A stretch of DNA of 64,000 bases. It comes from Vitrella brassicaformis CCMP3155. Lineage: Eukaryota; Protista; Chromerida. The translations under genes were made by a program, and so were the position numbers. The DNA is taken from NCBI GenBank assembly GCA_001179505.1, contig CDMY01000227.1, positions 248,001 through 312,000 of the forward strand, given 5' to 3'. How positions within the stretch are numbered: position 1 is the stretch's first letter; each line of letters starts with the position of its first letter. The notes beneath the pieces are model-generated. The model searched no databases. It was given only the letters and a program-made list of their open reading frames with translations, and was not told the origin of the DNA. Below are positions 14,401-28,800 of the stretch, one piece after another.

Positions 14401-17400
14401 TTGCCCAAGCAGCCCTCATTCCCGCCCGTGGCGCCTGCACCTTCTTCCCTGCCGGAATTGGCCGAGCGATCGTGTCAAACGGACCCCATAGATGAGAAGA
14501 AAACGCCTCGATATAGCCCTCGAGTGGAGCCTCAGCCTCCGTCTCGTGGGCCGTCGGAGAAGCTCGCTGTTCCACCACTGAGCCAGAGTATGGATGAGAG
14601 GCTGAAGTTGCGGAGCATCCTGGTCATGATGAAGGGTGTTGCACGAGCCGTTCACGAGTCCAAGAGGGCCTCTGTGGCTCTGTCGGACGACGCTGTGCGG
14701 AGACGGGCTCCATCTATCGCAGACCTTGTGACTGCGGCGCTCTATAGATCGAGACATGGATCAATACCTGAGGCACGGTCGCGATGGGACATGGTGAAAG
14801 CATCGATGCTGTCTCCATATTACCGCTTCCCCACACCTGAGGGAGGCTCATTCTCATTCTCTTCAGCCTCAGCATCGTCTAGCAGCGCCACTCCCGGCGA
14901 GAAGGCTTCAGCCAAGGCCTCTCCGAGGGTGGACATGTCTGCTATTGAGAAGGTCCGAGCTGAGATAACGACGGAAGACATCGCCAAAGCACAGGCCGAA
15001 GAGGAGGGAAAGAGCGGAGCATCAGGATGTGAGGCCAGCTCCAGCTCTGCCTGGGAAGGGCTTAGGAAGCGCCGTAAACAAAGGGTGCCGACTGTCAAGA
15101 AGGTGTCGGCAGCCCTTGGCGTGCTGGGCTTCAAGACTGAAGAGCCAGGCCCGGACGACGACCAAGACGAGAAGGATGAGGTGGATCTACCAGGGGCAAA
15201 GCCACTCCAACGCTCAAGCGTCCCGAGGTTGGAGATTATCAGTGATGACGCAGCCGGACTGACAGCCGCAGGGCCACCGCTTGGTGAAGAGGATCTGAGA
15301 ATTGAGGATCTGGATGCTGTTATGGAGTACACTACGTTGATTGACGAAGTCTCGCATCTCAGGTAGTCGAGCACTAGCTTTCGCCCTTACAACTGTTTGT
15401 CTGCCTCATCGGTGTCATCCACTTCTTTGGATGCACACAGGGTGAAAGCTATGGCACACGAGGACCTCTGTAGCCATCTGGCTCGTACTGAGTCGCAGCA
15501 AGCCACGACAGAAGAGCAGACTCCCTCGATCGCTGGACCGTCAGAAGCAGTGGAGGAGGCCAGGGGAGCCCCGGGGCGGACGGCGGACGCCCTTAAAATG
15601 GCAGAATTAAGACGCCAGAACCAGCAACTCCTCATGAGAGTGAGCCAAGATTAAACATGTCTGTTTGCAAAAGATGTGTCTTGCGCTTTTCTTTAGTGTC
15701 TGTGGTTGACCGAGAAGCTCGTTCAGCTAAAGCCGAGACACCTGGATCTCAGTACCAAAACATGGACTTCCCCGTCCGCAGCACCACCACGTCTCGCAGT
15801 CTCGGAAGCTCCTCAGATGACCACATCAATCACTGCTTCCACCATTCCACTGGTCTCACAGGAGGGCGCCGCAAAGCCGGTGCGCTTCCATGAGACGCAA
15901 AGGGTCGCTGGTCGGCAGGCAGAGGAGAGACGGTCGGTCAGCACACTGCAGCCTGACGAGACGCCCCAGACCGCTTCTCGGCGCAGATCATCCCGATTTG
16001 ACAAGCAGGGCAGGTCCTGTCCTCTGCTCGCCTTGTTCTCGGAGTCACTGGCGAAGAGGGCTCAGGCTGAGTCTGGCGGCACAGAGGCTGAGGACAGTAA
16101 AGAACTGCAGTCGCTGTGGAAAGACACCCTGAAATCCCTGTCTCTTCTGGAGCCCTCACTATTGCCTGAGGAAGCACGTGAGGAACGACCGAAAACTGAG
16201 CAGCCCGGGAGAATGCGCGTCACGATTCACAACACCCCTTTCGGTGATCTGTCGAGGGAAGAGCACAGCCAGTGGCTCACCCCATCCGAGGCCACGCCTT
16301 TCATCGACAGCAGCCTGAAGTACTCGAGCTCACATCTCCCCCTCAGCCCCACTGTCCCTCGTCGCGTCTCAACGACGGCTCCTGCACGACAGCGACCCAT
16401 GCAGACATCAGAGACGCGGCAGAGGCAGGAGAAGCCTGCTGCTGCTGCTGCAGAACCTGCTGGGGCCTACGAGCGATTCCCACCTTCACTTGTTATAATT
16501 CCCCAGCCTGGCAGGGAAGGCAGTCGGCCGCAATCAGCAAAAGCGGCCACAGATACTTCTGTTCTACAGCTGGTCGTGGGCGAGGCTGGCCGCACGTGCG
16601 ACGAAGAAGAGAGAACGGCAAGCCCCGAAGGAGGATCAAGTGCAATCGCAGCGTCTGCTTCCGCCCAATCGTCGAGGCCCAGCAGTCCCGCATTCCATGC
16701 CACCAAGCTGCGGAAGAAGTCAGAACCCCAGGATACCGATGATGAGCTGCTATTCTTGTCTCAAGTCGAGTCGGCTGTGTCTCCAAGGGACCGCAAGCGT
16801 GGCAGCTCGAAGAGCCTCTCCAGCGCCGTTGCATCGCCTGAAAGCCGTGGGAAGACCGGCTCCACTGTGCTTCGTCCTTCGTTCGCTCTGTCTGCTGATG
16901 AGGCGATGCACTCAGACGAGCCGCTTTCGTCCTGCTGGCACATGCAGCCACCCCCTCCGCTACCAAGCCTCGCCGAGAGACCTGCTGACGCCTCACCAAC
17001 CAGAGCCAAGACCGCCTCCACGTCACCACCATCTCGCGGGCGGCACGCAAGCATGGCGTCGGCATCCTCAGGCGAGGAACTGCCCCCAATCCATCAACAG
17101 TCAAGGCCAGACGTCAGCCAGCGCAGCCAGCGAAGAGCACAGTACGAGACGATCAGAGACGCAGTGGTTGGTGGGGTTGAGGGAAGGAGCCAAGAGCAGG
17201 GGCAGTCAGTGGTGATGAGTGGGCTGTCTCTGCATGAAGGGATAGCAGCCAGCAGGGGCAGGGGTAGAGCAGAGGAGCGGGGGAGAGAGGTCAGGCAAGG
17301 GGCGGGGGCCACGCAGGAGTATCCCGAGAAGAGGCAGACCAGGACAATGCGAGTCTCTGCTTTGCAAGAACAAGCACTGCAGCGGTTCACACGGCCCACG

Positions 17401-17433
17401 CCGCCTCGGCAGCTGCTACGTACTGGACTGTGA
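11454..17433 (+). CDS. Large hypothetical protein: N-terminal coiled-coil, then extensive Ser/Glu/Pro/Ala-rich disordered regions; multi-exon
   Basis: Chain of long + strand ORFs (11451-12218, 12211-13128, 13750-14124, 14239-15366, 15397-15654, 15706-17433) joined by short GT-AG introns. Heptad segments include RVKELEETVSRLETQLQTVKQTLERTK. No family recognised. Confidence 0.6.
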
Positions 17434-19359: not shown

Positions 19360-20708
19360 GCACCGCACCTGAAGGGACACTTCTGCCTCTGACCGAGCGA
19401 TGACAAAGTCGTCGAAGGTGATGACCCGCGTGTCACCGACGATCTCCACGTACTGCACATATGTGTGCACACACATGACATGACATGTGCACACACGGAT
19501 CCGCCCGACCCCCCCACCCACCTGTCTGTTGGGATGCAGGAAGGAGCAGTGGAAGGTCAGCACGTGGGGCGGCTCCAGGGTGTCCGGCTTGGCCTCCTCG
19601 AAAACCACCTCACCCGACACGTCAAGCGGGATGCCATCCGGCGTGCACACCGATGCGCGGGCGCACACGTACGTCGGCCATCGGTACTGGAATGCAACCA
19701 ACGCGATGCGGATACAGTACCTGCACAGACCAAGAGCACACCGTTGCTGATTGATTGGACAGTGCCGTGAGTGAATCGATGGGTGTTATTGGCCACGTCC
19801 ATACCATCCGAGGTCGCCCACACATCCGAGTGGGTCGCCGTCTGGCCTCGTGCTGACGACCACAGCCCACATGTCTGTCTCGTGCGGCACATATCCGTGG
19901 AATGACTGACCGGATGTCGCCCCCATTAAGGAAGGCCTGGCTGCCAGCGAAGGAGAAGTTGACGCCCACGCGCTTGACCGGGCCAAACAGGGGGTCGCCG
20001 ACCAGCGACGAGAGGCACTGCAGACGATCGTGGTGCATGAACATGACGCCATCCATGAATTGAAGCCCCTTGTCGCAGCACGCCTGCACGATCTTGAGCA
20101 GCTCCTCCAGATTCGTGGCGGTCGGTTTTTCAAGCAGAATGTGTTTCTTGGCCTCAGCCGCCTTCACCGCCCACTCGAGGTGGAGCCTGACCAGTGCACA
20201 ACACATCACCTCCCATCCCGATGCCTCCCAAACTTCGTGTGGGCATTCGTGAGTCTCACTTGGTGGGCAGCGGGATGTAGACGGCCTCGACCAGCGGGTC
20301 GTCTAGCAGCGCCTGGTAGCCCTCGATGGCCCTGGGCAGACTGCCGGTCTTGGTCTTGGTCTTGGCCCTGGTTGCCGTGATGAACTCGACGCATGAGCTG
20401 TGTGCCCGTGATGCACAGGCTGAGATATCGGCATTTGAAGACAGCTGGATGGCCCTGACGTTCTTCTGCGCAACTGCACAGCACAGCAGAGCAGAGCAGA
20501 GCAGCATCTTGTATTGTACGTGCATTTCAGTGAATCCGAGCTCCATGTGACTTACTAGCGGCGCAGCCGACGATGCCAAAACTGACGAGATCTGCAAGCA
20601 AACACAGACATAAACACACCATCTGCAGATCTGCCATGCCACGGCAGCTTTGGCTGTCACACTGCAGCTAACATTCACCGCACCTGTTTCAGCTCCTGAA
20701 GCGGCCAT
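18889..20708 (-). CDS. Gfo/Idh/MocA family NAD(P)-dependent oxidoreductase; multi-exon
   Basis: VSFGIVGCAAIAQKNVRAI; YQALLDDPLVEAVYIPLPT; HLEWAVKAAEAKKHILLEKP; FMDGVMFMHHDR; GCVGDLGWYGIR; ends QTQSVLDAVMRS...HNS*. Confidence 0.92.
19315..19358. repeat. Compound (TC)n(TG)n intronic microsatellite, representative of dozens in the window
   Basis: Directly visible. Similar tracts at about 265-312, 3211-3240, 41065-41102 and 52091-52116. Confidence 0.9.
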
Positions 20709-20776: not shown

Positions 20777-20930
20777 GTAGTAGGCCGAAAAAAGGAGGAG
20801 GAGTTAGAAGGAGGCGTTTCTTGGGGATGTGCTGATGGACGCGCTTGCGTACATGCATAGGGGTCACAGAGATCGGCTTCAGCCGTTTTCTTGACGCTTT
20901 CGTTTGCTTGCATCTCCCTCGGGCTCCTGC

Positions 20931-22584
20931 ATGGCGGACATGAGTCAAGGGTGAGCACACAGGATGAAACGGGAACCGCCAGCATGTCACAATCTGCAGA
21001 CGTGACGTATGTTGGTGTTTCAGGGTCCCCCCCGGCTCCTCGGCGCCTCCGCCTACCGCTGCTGCGGGCGGCGCCACTCAGCCGCCAGCGAGCAGTGTAC
21101 ACGCGGTTCCACCGTTGCCGGGTCGGCCAATGAATGCATCCACACATGCATGAACGCATGCATGGAACGCATGGCTCCCTCCTTCCTCCTATTCCCTCAG
21201 GTCCGTTTCCACCTCAAGTGTGCGGAGGTATGCCTCCTCCGCCAGACCATGACGCCGGTCCCTCACTGGCAGCCAAGCGGCCCAAATCGAAGGCCAAGAG
21301 CAAGGCCAAGCGCAAGTCGGCTGCCACCAGCAAGAAGAGGGCCGGTGCGGCGGGCAGACAGGCGGCCGTTATGCCGCCTGTTGCTGGCGGTGATATGTGG
21401 AATAGTGCTGGTGTTGGGCCTCCTGCTGGCGCGGCTGAGGTTGTGCCTCCTATGTCGTTGGCCATGGGGGTGCCCGTTCCCATGGGCGGAGTGGCGATGG
21501 GAGGGGTGCCTACGGGGGCCAGTCAGCCCATTGGTACGGGACGAATAAAAGGCGATGAGGGCGGCATATGTGTGTGCCATTCTTCTGTCTGCGTGCAGGC
21601 GAGCCTTCATCGTCAGCTTATGAGGCAGCAGGCAGCCCCCCTGCTGTGGCCGGCGGGGGCCTTCGGATGCCCATGTTCCTCCCCTCCAGCCCTCCCGCCC
21701 ATCCCCACCTGCAATTCCCCTCCTATCGCGGCCCTCCCCCGTCCTTCCCCCCACACATGCCGCCACACAGGTTTCCCCCACCCACTCTGCTGCGGGGCCG
21801 CTTCCCAGCGGCAGCAATGTCATATCCGCCCGGCCCGCCCCCTCCCTATTTCTTCCCACCGAGGGCCATGGTGGTCGACACGCGGCCGGCAGCACCGATA
21901 GCACCACCGGCAGCCAATGTGAAGATGGAGCAGGCGGCGAGTAGTGCTGTCGCTGGGGAGCAGCCCGCCGACAATAAAGTGTCGGCTGCTGCTGCTGCTG
22001 CTGGTGGTGGGGAGAAGCCGACTTTGCCGGACTATAACGGTGGACTGGTCAGTGAAATCCACAGATGGATGGATGGATGACACGTATGTATATGTGGGTG
22101 GTTGTGGCTGGTGTGTCCTTGTGTGTGTTCAGTCGTTGCCGCCCCCACTGAATGCGTCCGAGCGGATCCGGGAGCTCCACGAAGCACTCATGAAGAAGGC
22201 AAGTCCATGCTGCACACGACGCACCGACCGACCGTCTTGACTGACGTTCACATCAGCATGGGTATGTGTCTGCTTTCAACGTCAGGACGCGGAGGGCAGC
22301 GATTCGTATCTGCAGGCGCTCGAGAGGCTGCCGGGTGTCATTCGGCTGCAGAAGGCCAACGAACTGGAACTACTCGCATACCGACTGCAAGTTGAAGCTA
22401 GTGAGTCAGCCGACCGAGTACCAATTGTCACACACACAGACACACACACCTTCTTCGCTGTCGTGTTTCAGACGACGAGATGGCTCGCGGGAAACGCCTT
22501 CGCATTCTGCACACCGACACGGACAATGACGAGAGGCCCGAGGGGCGAGGGGCGAAGCGGACTATTGGGGAGAGGGACAGATGA
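20931..22584 (+). CDS. Pro/Ala-rich protein with a basic NLS-like segment and a C-terminal LIN52-like (MuvB/DREAM) helical signature
   Basis: Splice model gives AKRPKSKAKSKAKRK and the C-terminus YLQALERLPGVIRLQKANELELLAYRLQVEA|NDEMARGKRLRILH (exons 22286-22400 and 22472-22584). The LIN52 resemblance is from memory of the family. Confidence 0.65.
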
Positions 22585-22857
22585 GGGCTGCTGGCTTGGT
22601 GAGTGAGAGGAGGAGGGTCGGCTCAGACACTGTAGACGGTGTAGCTCATGTGTTGGCGATGAGACGAGATGAGATGGTCGGGGGACACAGTGTATGGTGT
22701 GGTGAATATATAAGTGGTGGACAATCTTCCTTGGATGCGCGTGAATGCGTAATGATGGGAAGGACGCTGTCGTCTTTTCTGCCTTGGAAGTCTGCTCCTC
22801 CGTAATGCAGTGATCTTGAGACACTCGGCGAGACACACATCGCTGGCCGCATGCAGA

Positions 22858-25800
22858 ATGTGGGGGCTGGGTGGGGGCGATGACTGGACGGTGACGGTGA
22901 CGGCGGCGAGGAGCATGAAGAGCGGCAAGAAAGCCCAGAGAAAGGGCGAATCTCCTCCACCAGTACCATCCATCTGCCCTCAAGACTCTAAGGAGGCGCT
23001 CCTCCCCATCCTCAACACAGCTGCTGTGGACGCTCAAGTCTACTTCCAGCAACTGCCGGCCTTCCTTAACCAAATCGATGCGCATGCCATCTCGGAGGCG
23101 TGTGCGCTCTTCGACTCGGTGACGCCGTCAATCATTCCTCTTATCGCGTGCATCTTCTATGAGGTTGAGTGCTTGAAGCCGGCGGACGCACTGCCAGAGA
23201 ACGGCGACCAGACCAAAAGAGATGCCAGCAAGGGCGCTAAGAGCAGGAAGAGGAAGGCAGTTGAGCCGACCATCAAGGTGGCCGACGCGGCCGATGTGTC
23301 GGCATATCTATCCGAGCAAGAGAGGATATCTATCAGAACGTTTCTCGAGAGGGCGAGGGACTTCTTCTGCAGGGGGGTCTTCGATTACCTTGAAGATGCG
23401 TACGTGGAAGAGCAATGCGAGGCGTTCCGGGTATGCTTCACACGACGACCTTCGATGGACACGTGTTTCTTTGGTATTTGCATCATCAGGTGGCCAAGAC
23501 AGAGCCTCTGTTGCAGCTGCTCAAGGACATTGCGGCCGATGTCAAGGACAAGTCGGACCTGTCATCTGAGGACCTGCGACACAGGCGCGAGACACTGAAA
23601 AGAAAACAACTAAACAAGTACGTGGCTTCAGAATTGCCTTTTCTATGGAAGAAATATACACATGTGCTTCTGTATGATGTAGACTCTTCGTGTTGGAGCA
23701 ACTGCGGGCCTTTAGAGCAGGAGAGGGTGCCCTGCTGACGAATGCAAAGGATGTCGCAGACAGTCCAGAAGTGCGGAAACAGCTGGAGGTGGGAAGAAAT
23801 AGGTCTTCAATAGAAAGAGCATTGCTGCTTCCTCTTTTCTCAGCGTCTATACCGTCGTCTCATCGCCCATCCTGTCCAAGCGACGTCCCCTGCTGAGCCA
23901 GACAAGGCTGCAGCACTCACGTCGCAGCCCCCCATCTCGCCCACCACACCGATTAGTGCTGCATTCGCATCCCTAGGGTTCAGCCCAGACACAAGCCCGC
24001 TGGCCAAGCGAGGGACAGTGCAGAGACGACAGAGCCGCGTCACCTTCGGCAAGTACTCTGATACATCGGCATCGGGGTCGGCCCAGGGCAGCTGCGGCTG
24101 GGACACTTATGAATGGTCCGGCGCTTCCCCTCAGCCAATCATGTCTGGATGGAGTGGGGCGTACGACTCAGCAGACAGGATCCTCACCCTGGAAGACAGG
24201 AATGAATTCGAGGCGAAGAAGAAATCAGGCCGGTAAGTACCATGCACCTATAGCATATACAGGCTTTTGTAGGTATTTGCCCGTTTCTGTTTGGTCAGGC
24301 TATGGACAGATCAGCCTGAGACACAACCTGGGGCACAAGAGAGCCCCTCTGCCAGCTCCGTCTTTTCCCGTGCACCCACGAGCATCTCCCTGCTTTCCTA
24401 CACAGCACCGATCCCCATGACAGGGGGCAAAGAACACGATGACGATAGCAGCCCCAAAAGCGTTCTCAAAGTGCCCCGCGCGGCAGCAGAGGGCGCATAT
24501 GCCGCTGTGTCTTCAATGCGGGACATGAGTGAGCGCTTTGCGGCCTGGTTGGCGGGCAAGCAGAAGCTGTGTAAGTGAGAACACACACTACAGCACACAT
24601 AAGCACAGTGGCACTTCTTCCATCCGTCAGGTGTTGAGGTGCCGAGGCACGCCGGGCAGGAGAAAGAGAGGGACACCGTGGTGATCGTGGGGGACAAAAC
24701 GGACCTGCTGAACCAGTGCCCATATTTGGAAGAGATCTTGTTGGAGCAGAGACAGAGGCACGAGGAGCTGCGGGAAGCCGTCCATGAGGGGTGGGTAACA
24801 GTGGGCAGAATGCTCATCAACTATTCGGTATCATCTAAACACGTGTACTCCATCTCCCTTCCTTTTCGCTGAAGGGCTGTTCGTCGTCACCACGAGATGA
24901 CGGCAGGTTTTCTGGATGAAGGAGAGGCCCCGCAGCGGGCCAAAGAGGGAGGCATTGAGAAGCTCAAGAAGCTGAATGCTGCCGACGCGGGTAAGACACG
25001 AAAGGGGAGAGTTTGTTGCTCGAGTTGCATTTTCGTCTTTCCCTTATCGTGCAGACTTCTCCACTCTTGTCGACTACATACTCAAATACCTCCTGACAAA
25101 CTATGGATCCATCAAGAAAGGCTTTGAGGTGCAATAGTCTCCATCACAGGAGCCTTCTGGATACCTTCCGTCTTCGTGTTGTCTCAGAGTCTCGACGTTA
25201 ACGAAGATGGCACGCTGGACATGGTCGATTTCGAAGAGACGATGCGACAGTGGGGCATCAACAAGAATGCAGCCCAACAAATTTTCCTTGCGGTAGACAA
25301 ATTGATTCGTGTGCGCCGCTTGGCGATCCAACATGTCTCGTCGTTCTGCGTTGTAGGTAGACGTGCGTCAAGACGGGGAGATCGACCTTGCAACGCTGCA
25401 GAGGTTCTTTCGTTGGCAGCTCACCGAGGAAAGCGACGCACCTGTCATGTCTCTGGTCGATCAGTTCGGAAGTAAGTCATGCGACGGCTGCCTGCCCATC
25501 GCACGTGTATCGCGTGTCTGCCTGTCCTTCAGAGAGTGATGCGTCGCTGCTGATGGAGATTCGTGAGAAGCTCCTGCTGCGCTATGGTAAGGTGGAAGGT
25601 GGCGAGCCTCAACTGGTGTCCAAAACTCTTGTTCTATGGTAGGGTCTGTTGCGCGCGCCTTTAGCATGATCGATGTCAATAAGGACCAGGGGCTATCGCA
25701 AGAAGAGTTTATCAAGGCTGCAGGACGCATACGCATCTGCAGAGAGGGTCAGGGGGAGCAACGAATGCCTGGTATGACGTTTAAATGGTTGTCCGTGAAT

Positions 25801-28800
25801 GCAGACGGGATGCGGCTGTTTCAGCTGATGGACCTCGACAGGAGCGGCACGGTCGACATGAGCGAGTTCCAGACCGCACTCAAAGACCACCAGCTTGACA
25901 TCACCGGGTTCACCTCGTTCGAAGACTCGGCACTTCTCTCAGCCTTCAGACTGAAGTTGCTCAAGGTGTACGGCTCCCTCCCGGCAGCTGAGGACGCCTT
26001 CCTTGAAGCACTGACACCTTCGCCCTCGATGAGGCGGAGGCGATCAAAGCTCATGGGGCCCTCACTCATGATGGGAGCGACGGTCACTGCTGCTGGTGGA
26101 GACGGGCAAGGGCCGGGTGGCATCGACGGCGAGAATCGTGAGATCAAGTACGGCAGCACACTGTCACTGATGGACTGGCTGGACCTCGTGCAGGAGCTGG
26201 CTCTGCGTAAGAGAGGGAAGGGGGGGCAAGAAAGGGCAAGTGCATATGTTGGTTCACCGCAGCCATGAGTGAGGAGGAGGCAACTGCCGTCCATTCTGTG
26301 CTCGACAAGACAGAGTCGGGGAGCATCGCACTGTCGTAAGTGATACTTGTGGGAACGCTGAAGGCGATCCACCCTCCTCATCCATGTCTCCGTGTATGTC
26401 AGCGCTCTTTTCGCCGCTGTACGTGGCGGAGTCCTGCGTGAAGGCGAACAAAAAAGCGTCGTCCCCTCATTCCTGACGTAAGCAGCTCAGTCAGAAAGCC
26501 TGAAAATCCGCTAATCGATTCCTGAAACGCATGTACTTATGCAGGGATCATCACTTCAATCAGTTCTTGGATACGTTTAAGGTACGTCAATGGACGCCAG
26601 CGGGGCAAGAAAGACCTCACCACCTGAAAGCAGGCACCCGAGAGCGAATTCATTGCACACAAGCTGCGAGAAATGCAGACCGTCCTGCCCTCCTTCTGCA
26701 AGGTGACTTGTCTTGCCCGCCTTCGACCCTCACACATGACCCATCCTTCATCTGTGGCTCTGTTTGCATAAGGATGTCCGCACCGAGGCAATGCGCGAAG
26801 TCGAGGAAGAGCTGCAGCGGCAGAGAAGCGAACTTGATAACCTTGAGGTGAGAGATAACCTTGATGAGTACTCACGCCACTCTCCGTCTGTGGAATCGAT
26901 CAGTCAGGCGGAGGCAATGGTTGAGGCCACAGCATTCGTGTCGGACCACTTCGACCGCCTCATCGAGAGCATCAACAGGCAGCGAGACAAGACACTCAAA
27001 GCCCTCACTGTGCACCTGCAGACACTCACACACATGCACAAGACCAGGCTGGAAGACGCACAAAAGCGTGTCAAAGAGGCAAGTAGAGACACGACGGCAG
27101 ATGCCAGCGGGCATATACCGTGTTGTTGTCCGCGAGTCCGTGCAGACGTGGAGCGCTAAGCTGCAAGAGTGGGAGGATGCAGTGACCCACCTGACCGACA
27201 AGGCAGCAATGGAGGAAGAGGCGAAAGTAGGAATTGACTTGCAGTGCAGGTACACATGACTCGCCGGTCGTCATGGGCTGTGTCTCTCCCATGCAGGCCC
27301 ACGACCACTTCCCGTCTGGATGGGATTGCGTGCAGTTGCTCAAGCTCAGCTGCTGGCTGCGGTGTGATGTCAAAAACCGCCTCATATACCACATCGCCAA
27401 CACATTCGCCGACGTCGCCTTCCACGCGAAGTGGCAGGAGACCGAGACGGAGCAGTACGTGACACCTGACGTGCTGAGGGAGATCATCTCGCGGGTGCCC
27501 ATCAACACACTCTCGTAAGTGATCACTTGAGCTGTGTGCATCCATGGAGCGTCCCTGTCTGTCTGCAGTTCGTTATTGGAAGAGTGGAGAGTCAGAGAGA
27601 AGGAGATGGCACGCCTGAGCGTCTCAGAGGTCAGGAAGGAATCGGGGCTGACCTTTGCTCTGTCGGAAGAGGAGAAAGCCAAGCGCGCGCCGCAGTGGTC
27701 CCTCAAGCCACTGATAGACAACGAGATCCGTGACCGTCGACTGATGGCCGAAAACTTGTACAAGTCATGGTCGTTGCCGGTGCTCAAGGCGGCCAGATTG
27801 AGGGGCCAGGAGGAGTTCCCAGACCTCCTTGAACGCGAAATACACCACAAGACACGGCGAGGACAGGTGGGAACACAGCTGGACACACATGCCTTCTATG
27901 TGGCCTCCCCTCTCTGTCCCAGATCCGGCTCTACAGCGAGCCACGCGACGCAGTGGACATAGACGGCTACGTAGCTACGCTTGCGTGCGATAAGTAAGTG
28001 ACGCATGCAGGACCATTCTCCCCACGACACTGGATATGGATTGAAATCGGTGCAGACGCTATGCCACTGTGCATGCGACGGTCGAGTGCACTGCCCAAGA
28101 GTTGCAGAAGGCAGATCGCGCCTTCAAGCCAGCGGAGGAGCACCAAACGGATGATGCACAGAAGCCCGGCCCCATGCGGCGAGCGGTAACCGTGCGTCTT
28201 GTGGATGAGGGGGCACCCGAGCCTTTCCGAGCAACAGCCGGGCCAAAGAAGACAGGACGGGCTAGGCTGCAGACAAGGAGGACGGCCGAGCTGATTCTCT
28301 CGATCCCTCCGGTGCCCTCTCAGCCCCCTCCACGCACATTCCGATCTTACTTCGAGGTGGAGATCCTCTCACTCCCAAACCTATACGGCGCTTGGGGACA
28401 GGTCTGCATCGGCCTGGACGCACCTCGGGTCACTCAAAATGACGTCAATCTCGCTCTGCCGGGGCAGGAGGGCCTCCCCTTCCCCCAAAAGGACAGACCT
28501 GCACAGGCAGCGACAACACAGAAGGACGGCTATGTCAGCCCAGAGGCAGTGTCGGACGAGACGATGCTGCACATGACCACACTTGCACAAGGGGAGGAGG
28601 CGGGGACATGTCAGCAGGAGGGAGAGCAAGCGCCCCGCTCTCCGTCATTTCCGTTCAAGCCGGATCTGTCTGAGGCGAAGAGTGTGGGCAGCAGGGGCGG
28701 CGTGGTACTGCAGACCAATGGGGTGCTGCATGCATTCGGAGAGGGCATAGACACGGGGCACAAGCTATCGACGGGAGACACTCTCGGCATCTATGTCGAC

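What the first reader, a model, noticed from the sequence alone, without database searches (positions are those of the whole stretch)
20931..22584. Candidate LIN52 (MuvB/DREAM) subunit hidden at the C-terminus of a proline-rich orphan
Seen: joining exons 22286-22400 and 22472-22584 gives LQALERLPGVIRLQKANELELLAYRLQVEANDEMARGKRLRILH. The junction falls inside the motif, so the ORF track does not show it. Recalled knowledge: the conserved C-terminus of animal LIN52 reads roughly LHELGSLTTANLMEKVRGLQNLAYQLGLDESREMTRGKFLNIL. It aligns without gaps (LAYxL..E..EM.RGK.L.IL); this helix pair binds LIN9 and B-Myb in MuvB. The preceding exon carries LNASERI, which has the spacing of the LxSxExL pocket-protein motif (speculative). 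Inference: a DREAM/MuvB-like cell-cycle complex may persist in this alveolate, a lineage whose apicomplexan relatives are generally described as lacking canonical Rb/E2F control.
Basis: partly seen in the sequence, partly recalled or inferred. Interest (0 to 1): 0.75.

Follow-up and report, generated by a model that had tools for sequence, protein, structure and literature searches.

The report
Divergent LIN52 cell-cycle subunit in Vitrella
An expressed seven-exon gene of the alga Vitrella brassicaformis, filed in public databases as an uncharacterised protein, ends in the helical partner-binding domain of LIN52, a small subunit of the MuvB/DREAM cell-cycle gene-control complex, which suggests that this relative of malaria parasites keeps part of that machinery.

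Summary
The CDS is 1194 nt (397 aa) and equals the public Vitrella brassicaformis protein CEL95353.1 (P0001), which carries no name and no Pfam domain.

The C-terminal ~80 residues, encoded by exons 5-7, are a LIN52-family domain.
- Pfam LIN52 (PF10044) is the only family hit. It scores 18.7 bits on the whole protein and 22.1-22.3 bits on the isolated C-terminus (cut-off 22).
- Human LIN52 (6c48_B) is the best match in the PDB.
- A scan of 1.84 billion proteins gave one single-stretch match at E <= 0.001, a 132-aa stramenopile protein that is itself a clear Pfam LIN52 (35.8 bits).
- hhalign against that protein and its two relatives gives 96.5% probability.
- 3000 shuffles never exceed 11.5 bits, against 43.2 bits for the real sequence.

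Two higher-ranked hits to cadherin-type repeat proteins are repeat-sum artefacts.

The proposed pocket-binding motif is not supported. LNASERI reads LxAxExI, has no Ser at +10, and is not conserved in the nearest relatives. I could not test whether Vitrella has LIN9, LIN54, E2F or Rb.

Verdict: a new, divergent member of a known family. I found no published alveolate LIN52, and this scan had not noted it on other DNA.

The parts
20931..20950 (+). Exon 1 (coding part), start ATG at 20931
   Evidence: An in-frame stop lies 13 codons upstream. A spliced joint at 20950/21024 appears in three runs. The peptide maps to P0001 residue 1.
21024..21121 (+). Exon 2, Pro/Ala-rich
   Evidence: Joints. Maps to P0001 from residue 8.
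21201..21533 (+). Exon 3, Pro/Ala/Gly-rich. It holds a Lys/Arg cluster (residues 65-86, 21275-21340) that looks like a nuclear localisation signal.
   Evidence: Joints. 100% match to P0001. Coordinates. The NLS reading is inference from composition only.
21599..22047 (+). Exon 4, proline-rich and probably disordered. It contains a PPxY motif (residues 231-234, 21838-21849).
   Evidence: Joints. Residues 1-300 are 21% Pro, 18% Ala and 12% Gly. No Pfam family for residues 1-300.
22133..22198 (+). Exon 5: start of the conserved block (SLPPP..., first predicted helix). It contains LNASERI (22148-22168).
   Evidence: Aligned without gaps to stramenopile LIN52 proteins. Hits profile positions 41-61 in the six-frame scan.
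22199..22285 (+). Intron 5, GC..AG (donor GCAAGT)
   Evidence: The joint 22196/22284 has a 3-letter ambiguity in three runs. Splice sites were read.
22286..22400 (+). Exon 6: first half of the LIN52 C-terminal domain (through ...LAYRLQVEA)
   Evidence: Profile positions 62-102.
22401..22471 (+). Intron 6, GT..AG, 71 nt. It splits the LIN52 motif in phase 1 and holds a (CA)n run.
   Evidence: Exact joint in three runs.
22472..22584 (+). Exon 7: second half of the LIN52 domain (N-DEMARGKRLRILH, ending at 22512), an acidic/basic tail, and the stop TGA at 22582-22584
   Evidence: Profile positions 102-127.

Best explanation
The locus is a real, transcribed seven-exon gene of Vitrella brassicaformis (public protein CEL95353.1 / A0A0G4EHH9, 397 aa). 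Its last ~80 residues (301-383, exons 5-7) are a divergent LIN52-family C-terminal domain. In human LIN52 this part co-folds with the LIN9 Myb-binding-domain helices into a coiled coil, which anchors LIN52 in the MuvB core and forms a docking site for a transcription factor. The most likely mechanism, by inference, is that the Vitrella helices (predicted at residues 308-322, 326-335 and 339-369) pair with a LIN9-like protein in a MuvB-type transcription complex. The 300-residue proline-rich, probably disordered N-terminal arm, with its Lys/Arg cluster, would then take the place of the short pocket-protein-binding peptide of animal LIN52. Shown here: the gene structure, expression as spliced RNA, homology to LIN52, and predicted helical character. 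Inferred: LIN9 binding, nuclear location, and a role in cell-cycle gene control.
For: Gene model and expression: spliced contigs from three studies. Exon peptides map to P0001.

Direct profile hit: Pfam LIN52 PF10044 is the only family. It scores 18.7 bits (E 0.003) on the whole protein and 22.1-22.3 bits (E 2.3e-4 to 2.6e-4) on residues 290-397 and 320-380, on profile positions 40-92 of 93.

PDB: the best match of 177,635 sequences is human LIN52 6c48_B, a gap-free 45-residue alignment with E 0.072.

Exhaustive phmmer over 1.84e9 representatives: the only single-stretch hit at E <= 0.001 is P0004 (Phaeomonas parva, 132 aa, E 9.2e-4, 80 residues gap-free, 35% identity). P0004 is itself Pfam LIN52 at 35.8 bits, E 1.4e-8.

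Profile comparisons: hhalign of the Vitrella C-terminus against the alignment of P0004, P0005 and P0006 gives 96.5% probability, E 8.2e-10, over 83 columns. That alignment hits human LIN52 at E 7.5e-10. Adding the Vitrella sequence raises the score from 41.8 to 44.2 bits.

Controls: the real sequence scores 43.2 bits against 3000 shuffles with a maximum of 11.5, and the reversed sequence scores 2.7. In a six-frame scan of the window, the exon 5, 6 and 7 pieces hit collinear profile positions 41-61, 62-102 and 102-127.

Structure: the AlphaFold2 model is all-helical, with pLDDT 75-85 over the LIN52-like core.

Role of the domain in human MuvB: PMC8792015, PMC4421984.
Against: The whole protein falls below Pfam's gathering score (18.7 against 22), and the isolated domain clears it by only 0.1-0.3 bits. 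The protein is three times the usual LIN52 length and has no pocket-binding motif. No partner (LIN9, LIN54, LIN37, RBBP4) was shown in this genome. No other alveolate relative turned up in the exhaustive single-sequence search. The fold search gave nothing. The structure model has only moderate confidence (mean pLDDT 60.8, from a 4-sequence alignment).
Confidence: 0.8

Rival explanations
1. The domain descends from LIN52 but no longer works in MuvB. Vitrella may have lost LIN9/LIN54, as most apicomplexans lost E2F/Rb, and the helices plus the long proline-rich arm now serve another nuclear complex.
For: The protein has an unusual architecture: 397 aa, a 300-aa proline-rich extension, and no pocket motif. 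No other alveolate relative appeared. Tetrahymena MuvB is reported to have no recognisable LIN52 (PMC8216455).
Against: The positions shared by Vitrella, stramenopile and human LIN52 are the hydrophobic and EM.RG..L.IL positions of the LIN9-pairing helices, which suggests selection for the same interface. LIN9 and LIN54 exist in other alveolates (PMC8216455; bioRxiv 10.1101/788265). Chromerids are said to retain the ancestral cell-cycle kit (PMC6157590).
Confidence: 0.13
2. The match is a chance resemblance: a generic Leu/Arg/Glu-rich amphipathic helix that happens to look like LIN52.
For: The direct hits are weak (Pfam 18.7-22.3 bits; PDB E 0.072; Atlas feature score 0.76, which is lead-level).
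Against: LIN52 is the top or only hit in three different libraries. The bridge through P0004-P0006 is strong. Composition-preserving shuffles and the reversed sequence score far lower. The match extends 20 residues upstream into exon 5 against the stramenopile proteins.
Confidence: 0.05
3. The C-terminus is a remnant of a cadherin-type repeat.
For: The top non-self hit in the exhaustive search is a 2187-aa cadherin-repeat protein (P0002, E 6.9e-14). It matches the same region (PGVIRL..., LAYRLQVEAND, NDERPE).
Against: The score is the sum of nine repeats, the best of which reaches only 14.9 bits (i-E about 3e3). The second such hit, P0003, sums eleven repeats of at most 6.5 bits. Pfam Cadherin does not hit P0001 even at E 10. 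The region is predicted all-helical, whereas cadherin is a beta sandwich. The protein has no signal peptide-like start or further repeats.
Confidence: 0.02

Closest known systems
Human LIN52 (PDB 6c48 chain B, the LIN9-LIN52-B-Myb complex; Pfam PF10044)
   Same: The C-terminal helices align gap-free over 45-50 residues with 17 identities, including L..L..L, LAY.L and EM.RGK.L.IL. The domain sits at the C-terminus in both proteins.
   Different: Human LIN52 is 116 aa, with an N-terminal LxSxExL motif plus phospho-S28 that binds p107/p130 (PMC4421984). The Vitrella protein is 397 aa, has no such motif, and carries a 300-aa proline-rich arm instead.
Stramenopile LIN52-family proteins (Phaeomonas parva A0A6U4GFW1 = P0004, P0005; TARA ocean scaffold protein P0006)
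   Same: These are the closest relatives found: about 35% identity over 80-85 gap-free residues, including the PPP...R(D/E)L(Y/H)..L...D block upstream of the Pfam-covered part. Only the C-terminal half of the Pfam model is matched in both.
   Different: They are short (132-188 aa) and clear the Pfam threshold comfortably. Vitrella is longer and more divergent.
Arabidopsis LIN52A/LIN52B (plant DREAM, PMC8500230)
   Same: These are bona fide DREAM subunits that also lack the LxSxExL pocket motif, so that motif is not universal in the family. A plant LIN52 cluster was the nearest Atlas neighbour (lead only).
   Different: Their complex membership is shown by affinity purification. Nothing of the kind exists for Vitrella.
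Tetrahymena MuvB (Lin9, Anqa1/Lin54, RebL1, Jinn1, Jinn2; PMC8216455)
   Same: It is an alveolate MuvB-type complex, so partners for a LIN52 exist in the wider lineage.
   Different: The authors found no Lin52 or Lin37 orthologue there. The Vitrella gene would be a recognisable alveolate LIN52.

Membership tests
LIN52 (Pfam PF10044) | C-terminal LIN9/Myb-binding helical domain recognised by the family profile | tested here: met
   PF10044 is the only Pfam hit: 22.1-22.3 bits on the isolated C-terminus against a cut-off of 22, and 18.7 bits on the whole protein. hhalign gives 96.5% to Pfam-positive LIN52 proteins. Human LIN52 is the top PDB hit. Shuffle control: 0 of 3000.
LIN52 (Pfam PF10044) | Whole-protein score above Pfam's gathering threshold | tested here: not met
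   18.7 bits against 22 for the 397-aa protein. The low-complexity N-terminus costs score.
LIN52 (animal type) | N-terminal pocket-binding LxSxExL or LxCxE motif with a phospho-Ser about 10 residues after the Leu | tested here: not met
   P0001 has no L.C.E or L.S.E. LNASERI reads LxAxExI, with His at +10. The aligned residues in P0004-P0006 are VPVSGAL and LPLTGGL. Plant LIN52 also lacks the motif (PMC8500230), so this excludes the animal type, not the family.
LIN52 | Alpha-helical C-terminal segment | tested here: met
   AlphaFold2 predicts helices at fragment residues 19-33, 37-46 and 50-80, with pLDDT 75-85 in the core.
LIN52 | Small protein of about 110-190 aa | tested here: not met
   397 aa, of which residues 1-300 are Pro/Ala/Gly-rich with no Pfam family.
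MuvB/DREAM complex | Partner subunits LIN9 (DIRP), LIN54 (CXC), LIN37, RBBP4, plus E2F/DP and a pocket protein, encoded in the same genome | not testable with these tools
The scan's notes hold no such finding. No papers were found.
MuvB/DREAM complex | Physical association of LIN52 with LIN9 | not testable with these tools
   This needs a multimer prediction with the Vitrella LIN9 helices, or AP-MS/Y2H.
Cadherin repeat (PF00028) | Beta-sandwich repeat recognised by the Cadherin profile | tested here: not met
   No Cadherin hit at E <= 10. The best single repeat of P0002 scores 14.9 bits. The model is helical.

The most novel reading that the evidence does not exclude
Alveolates do have a LIN52. 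In this lineage the short pocket-protein-binding peptide has been replaced by a 300-residue proline-rich arm carrying an NLS-like cluster and a PPxY motif. MuvB would then recruit its regulators through a different adaptor surface, for example WW-domain or SH3-type partners, rather than through an Rb-family pocket. If so, the 'missing' LIN52/LIN37 of Tetrahymena MuvB (the unannotated Jinn1 and Jinn2 subunits) and of apicomplexans may be equally divergent proteins that can be found with a SAR-specific profile.
Probability: 0.2. Interest if true: 0.65.

Novelty: new member of a known kind. Interest (0 to 1): 0.45.

Why it matters
A 2019 survey reported LIN52 only from animals and Amoebozoa (bioRxiv 10.1101/788265). 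A 2021 study showed it in plants (PMC8500230). Another 2021 study reported it absent from the ciliate Tetrahymena, whose MuvB complex has two unexplained subunits (PMC8216455). A recognisable LIN52 domain in a chromerid, the free-living sister lineage of apicomplexan parasites, does three things:
- It extends the family to alveolates and supports an origin before the major eukaryotic groups split.
- It names an 'uncharacterised' protein.
- It gives a concrete handle (a SAR LIN52 profile and a bait protein) for asking whether MuvB-type control of cell-cycle genes existed in the ancestor of apicomplexans and when it was lost or remodelled.

It is a useful annotation and a testable lead, not a new kind of system.

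Tried and rejected
- Pfam on the three last exons taken separately gave no hit; the pieces of 22-38 aa are too short.
- The word-index search with the C-terminal 108 aa found 12 candidates, none scoring E <= 10.
- The word-index search with P0004 returned only itself and P0006, so no broad LIN52 family alignment could be built.
- Foldseek of the model against the PDB found nothing with E <= 0.001, as expected for a helical peptide that folds only with a partner.
- The Atlas search restricted to unnamed clusters found nothing. The first Atlas search gave a plant LIN52 cluster at 0.76, which counts only as a lead.
- The cadherin reading was rejected as a repeat-sum artefact.
- The pocket-motif reading of LNASERI was rejected.
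- Literature searches gave nothing on point: LIN52 + Vitrella (0 papers), Vitrella + E2F (one review), LIN54 + apicomplexa (0), MuvB + Toxoplasma (4 irrelevant). The chromerid genome paper and its 16 held supplements have no E2F, DIRP, LIN52 or tesmin entries.
- The paper describing the 6c48 structure (PNAS 2018) is not held, so B-Myb and LIN9 contact residues could not be checked one by one.
I recovered the public protein P0001 with an ORF reference (window:21134-21898, exon 3 in frame) and checked it against the exons piece by piece.

Full report
**1. What is in the sequence**

Exon 22286-22400 translates to DAEGSDSYLQALERLPGVIRLQKANELELLAYRLQVEA plus one extra base. That base, joined to 22472-22584, gives N-DEMARGKRLRILHTDTDNDERPEGRGAKRTIGERDR and a TGA stop.

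I laid public assemblies on 20800-22800. Runs X1, X6 and X7, from three studies, hold contigs in which six stretches are skipped:
- 20951-21023, GT..AG
- 21122-21200, GT..AG
- 21534-21598, GT..AG
- 22048-22132, GT..AG
- 22199-22285, GC..AG. The joint has a 3-letter ambiguity, and this is the only splice-like placement.
- 22401-22471, GT..AG, exact

One X7 contig of 1476 nt carries all seven exons. Run X8, from the same sample as X6, holds unspliced pieces across introns 2 and 5. So the spliced form is an RNA product, not a second genomic copy. These are contigs, not reads, so they give no expression level, strand or transcript ends. The strand follows from the splice-site letters.

The CDS is 20+98+333+449+66+115+113 = 1194 nt. 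An in-frame stop lies 13 codons upstream of the ATG at 20931.

**2. The protein**

A word search with the ORF window:21134-21898, in which exon 3 is in frame, returned the public protein P0001. It is 397 aa, from Vitrella brassicaformis CCMP3155 (CEL95353.1 / A0A0G4EHH9), is named 'unnamed protein product' or 'uncharacterized protein', and has no precomputed Pfam domain. Each exon's own translation maps onto P0001 in order, leaving only the four residues whose codons span an exon junction.

Residues 1-300 are 21% Pro, 18% Ala and 12% Gly, with no Pfam family. They hold a Lys/Arg cluster at residues 65-86 and a PPxY motif at 231-234.

**3. Is the C-terminus LIN52?**

*Direct tests.*
- Pfam LIN52 (PF10044) is the only family hit on the whole protein: 18.7 bits, E 0.003, below the gathering score of 22.
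- On residues 290-397 and 320-380 it scores 22.1 and 22.3 bits (E 2.6e-4 and 2.3e-4), on profile positions 40-92 of 93.
- phmmer against all PDB sequences puts human LIN52 (6c48_B) first, with E 0.072 and a gap-free 45-residue alignment.
- The language-model search of the ESM Atlas puts a plant LIN52 cluster first at 0.76. This is a lead only.

*Bridging test.* An exhaustive phmmer of residues 290-397 over 1.84 billion representatives gave four proteins at E <= 0.001:
- P0001 itself.
- Two giant repeat proteins, P0002 and P0003.
- P0004, a 132-aa protein of the stramenopile Phaeomonas parva (E 9.2e-4; 80 gap-free residues at 35% identity, reaching back into exon 5).

P0004 is a clear Pfam LIN52 at 35.8 bits, E 1.4e-8. 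Its relatives are P0005 and P0006. P0006 comes from TARA ocean metagenome scaffolds and is also PF10044. They score 34.8 and 31.3 bits in one stretch.

Further profile results:
- hhalign of the Vitrella C-terminus against the alignment of P0004-P0006 gives 96.5% probability, E 8.2e-10, over 83 columns.
- That alignment, without Vitrella, hits human LIN52 at E 7.5e-10 (41.8 bits). With Vitrella added it scores 44.2 bits.
- An HMM built from the three stramenopile proteins scores the real Vitrella C-terminus at 43.2 bits. 3000 shuffles average -0.7 with a maximum of 11.5, and the reversed sequence scores 2.7.
- In a six-frame scan of the whole window, the best three pieces are exons 6, 7 and 5. 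They hit collinear profile positions 62-102, 102-127 and 41-61. This supports the splice model independently of the annotation.

*Structure.* AlphaFold2, run on the 4-sequence alignment, predicts three helices at fragment residues 19-33, 37-46 and 50-80, with pLDDT 75-85 over the LIN52-like core. Foldseek found no significant PDB match. That is unsurprising for a peptide that folds only with a partner.

**4. The cadherin look-alike**

P0002 is a cadherin-repeat protein (Pfam Cadherin E 9e-32 for residues 600-800). It outranked P0004 at E 6.9e-14 and matches the same Vitrella region. Per-repeat scores show why. Nine repeats are summed, the best reaching only 14.9 bits (i-E about 3e3). P0003 sums eleven repeats of at most 6.5 bits each. 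The Pfam Cadherin profile does not hit P0001, and the region is predicted helical. I treat this as a chance resemblance multiplied by repeats.

**5. The pocket motif**

Animal LIN52 binds p107/p130 through LxSxExL plus phospho-S28, ten residues after the first Leu (PMC4421984). P0001 contains no L.C.E or L.S.E. LNASERI (residues 306-312) reads LxAxExI, with His at +10. It lies in a predicted helix. The aligned residues of the closest LIN52 proteins are VPVSGAL and LPLTGGL, which lack the Glu. A second stretch, LQALERL, fits the same loose pattern, which shows how easily it arises by chance. Arabidopsis LIN52A/B also lack the motif yet are true DREAM subunits, and there RBR1 binds LIN54-type TCX5/6 instead (PMC8500230). 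So the Vitrella protein is not an animal-type LIN52, but that does not remove it from the family.

**6. How it most likely works**

In human MuvB, LIN9 and LIN37 scaffold the complex. The LIN9 C-terminal region binds LIN52, and a LIN9 helical segment co-folds with the LIN52 C-terminus to make the B-Myb binding site. LIN52 acts as an adaptor for transcription factors (PMC8792015, PMC4421984).

The positions shared by Vitrella, stramenopile and human sequences are the spaced leucines, LA(Y/F).L and EM.RG..L.IL. By inference, the Vitrella helices pair with a LIN9-like protein, and the long proline-rich arm with its basic cluster supplies nuclear targeting and partner recruitment.

Other alveolates have such partners:
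- Tetrahymena MuvB contains Lin9, Lin54 (Anqa1) and RebL1, plus two unannotated subunits. The authors found no Lin52 or Lin37 (PMC8216455).
- A LIN9 Myb-binding domain was reported in Alveolata (bioRxiv 10.1101/788265).

I could not test whether Vitrella itself encodes LIN9, LIN54, LIN37, RBBP4, E2F/DP or Rb. One review states that chromerids keep the ancestral cell-cycle machinery and that cryptosporidians and gregarines keep E2F/DP/Rb, whereas Toxoplasma and Plasmodium lost them (PMC6157590).

**7. Novelty and verdict**

LIN52 was reported only in Metazoa and Amoebozoa in 2019 (10.1101/788265) and in plants in 2021 (PMC8500230). Pfam already tags stramenopile proteins as LIN52. I found no paper that mentions LIN52 together with Vitrella, LIN54 with apicomplexans, or MuvB in a Toxoplasma context; the four MuvB + Toxoplasma papers were irrelevant.

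The Vitrella gene is therefore a new, divergent member of a known family, unusual for its length and its missing pocket motif. The central interpretation is supported, the pocket-motif speculation is not, and the DREAM-complex inference remains open. This scan had not noted the feature on other DNA; the only related note is the same stretch.

Noticed in passing
window 22199-22285: Intron 5 uses a GC donor (GCAAGT...CAG). The other five introns are GT..AG. The joint is present in the spliced contigs of three runs.
   Followed up: partly
window 20835-20894: A short upstream ORF (MDALAYMHRGHRDRLQPFS, then a stop) lies in the 5' leader, in frame with the main ATG at 20931 and ending before it. The leader is covered by the transcript contigs from at least 20800.
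   Followed up: no
window 21838-21849 and 21275-21340: The proline-rich arm holds a PPxY motif (a WW-domain ligand type) and a 22-residue Lys/Arg cluster (NLS-like). Both are read from sequence only.
   Followed up: no
P0002 and P0003 (hits): In the exhaustive phmmer, giant repeat proteins (cadherin and bacterial Ig-like) outranked the true relative because 9-11 weak repeat matches were summed into one score. Per-domain scores are needed to see through this.
   Followed up: yes
window 19625-20209 (- strand), probably continuing to about 20708: The upstream neighbour, transcribed divergently, encodes a GFO_IDH_MocA-type oxidoreductase fragment (Pfam E 4.5e-7). No link to the LIN52-like gene is apparent.
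   Followed up: partly
window 25636-26265 (+ strand): An ORF with a pair of EF-hand calcium-binding motifs (Pfam EF-hand_1, E 6.9e-11).
   Followed up: partly
window 21977-22020 and 22424-22455: Simple repeats: a GCT/GGT run encoding poly-Ala/Gly in exon 4, and a (CA)n run in intron 6. Read laying flagged both as places where assemblies break. TGGA-type repeats (tggatggatgg) recur at intron starts in this window.
   Followed up: no
window 15706-17433 (+ strand): A long open frame (575 aa) rich in Ser, Pro, Arg and Ala. I did not run any family or similarity search on it.
   Followed up: no
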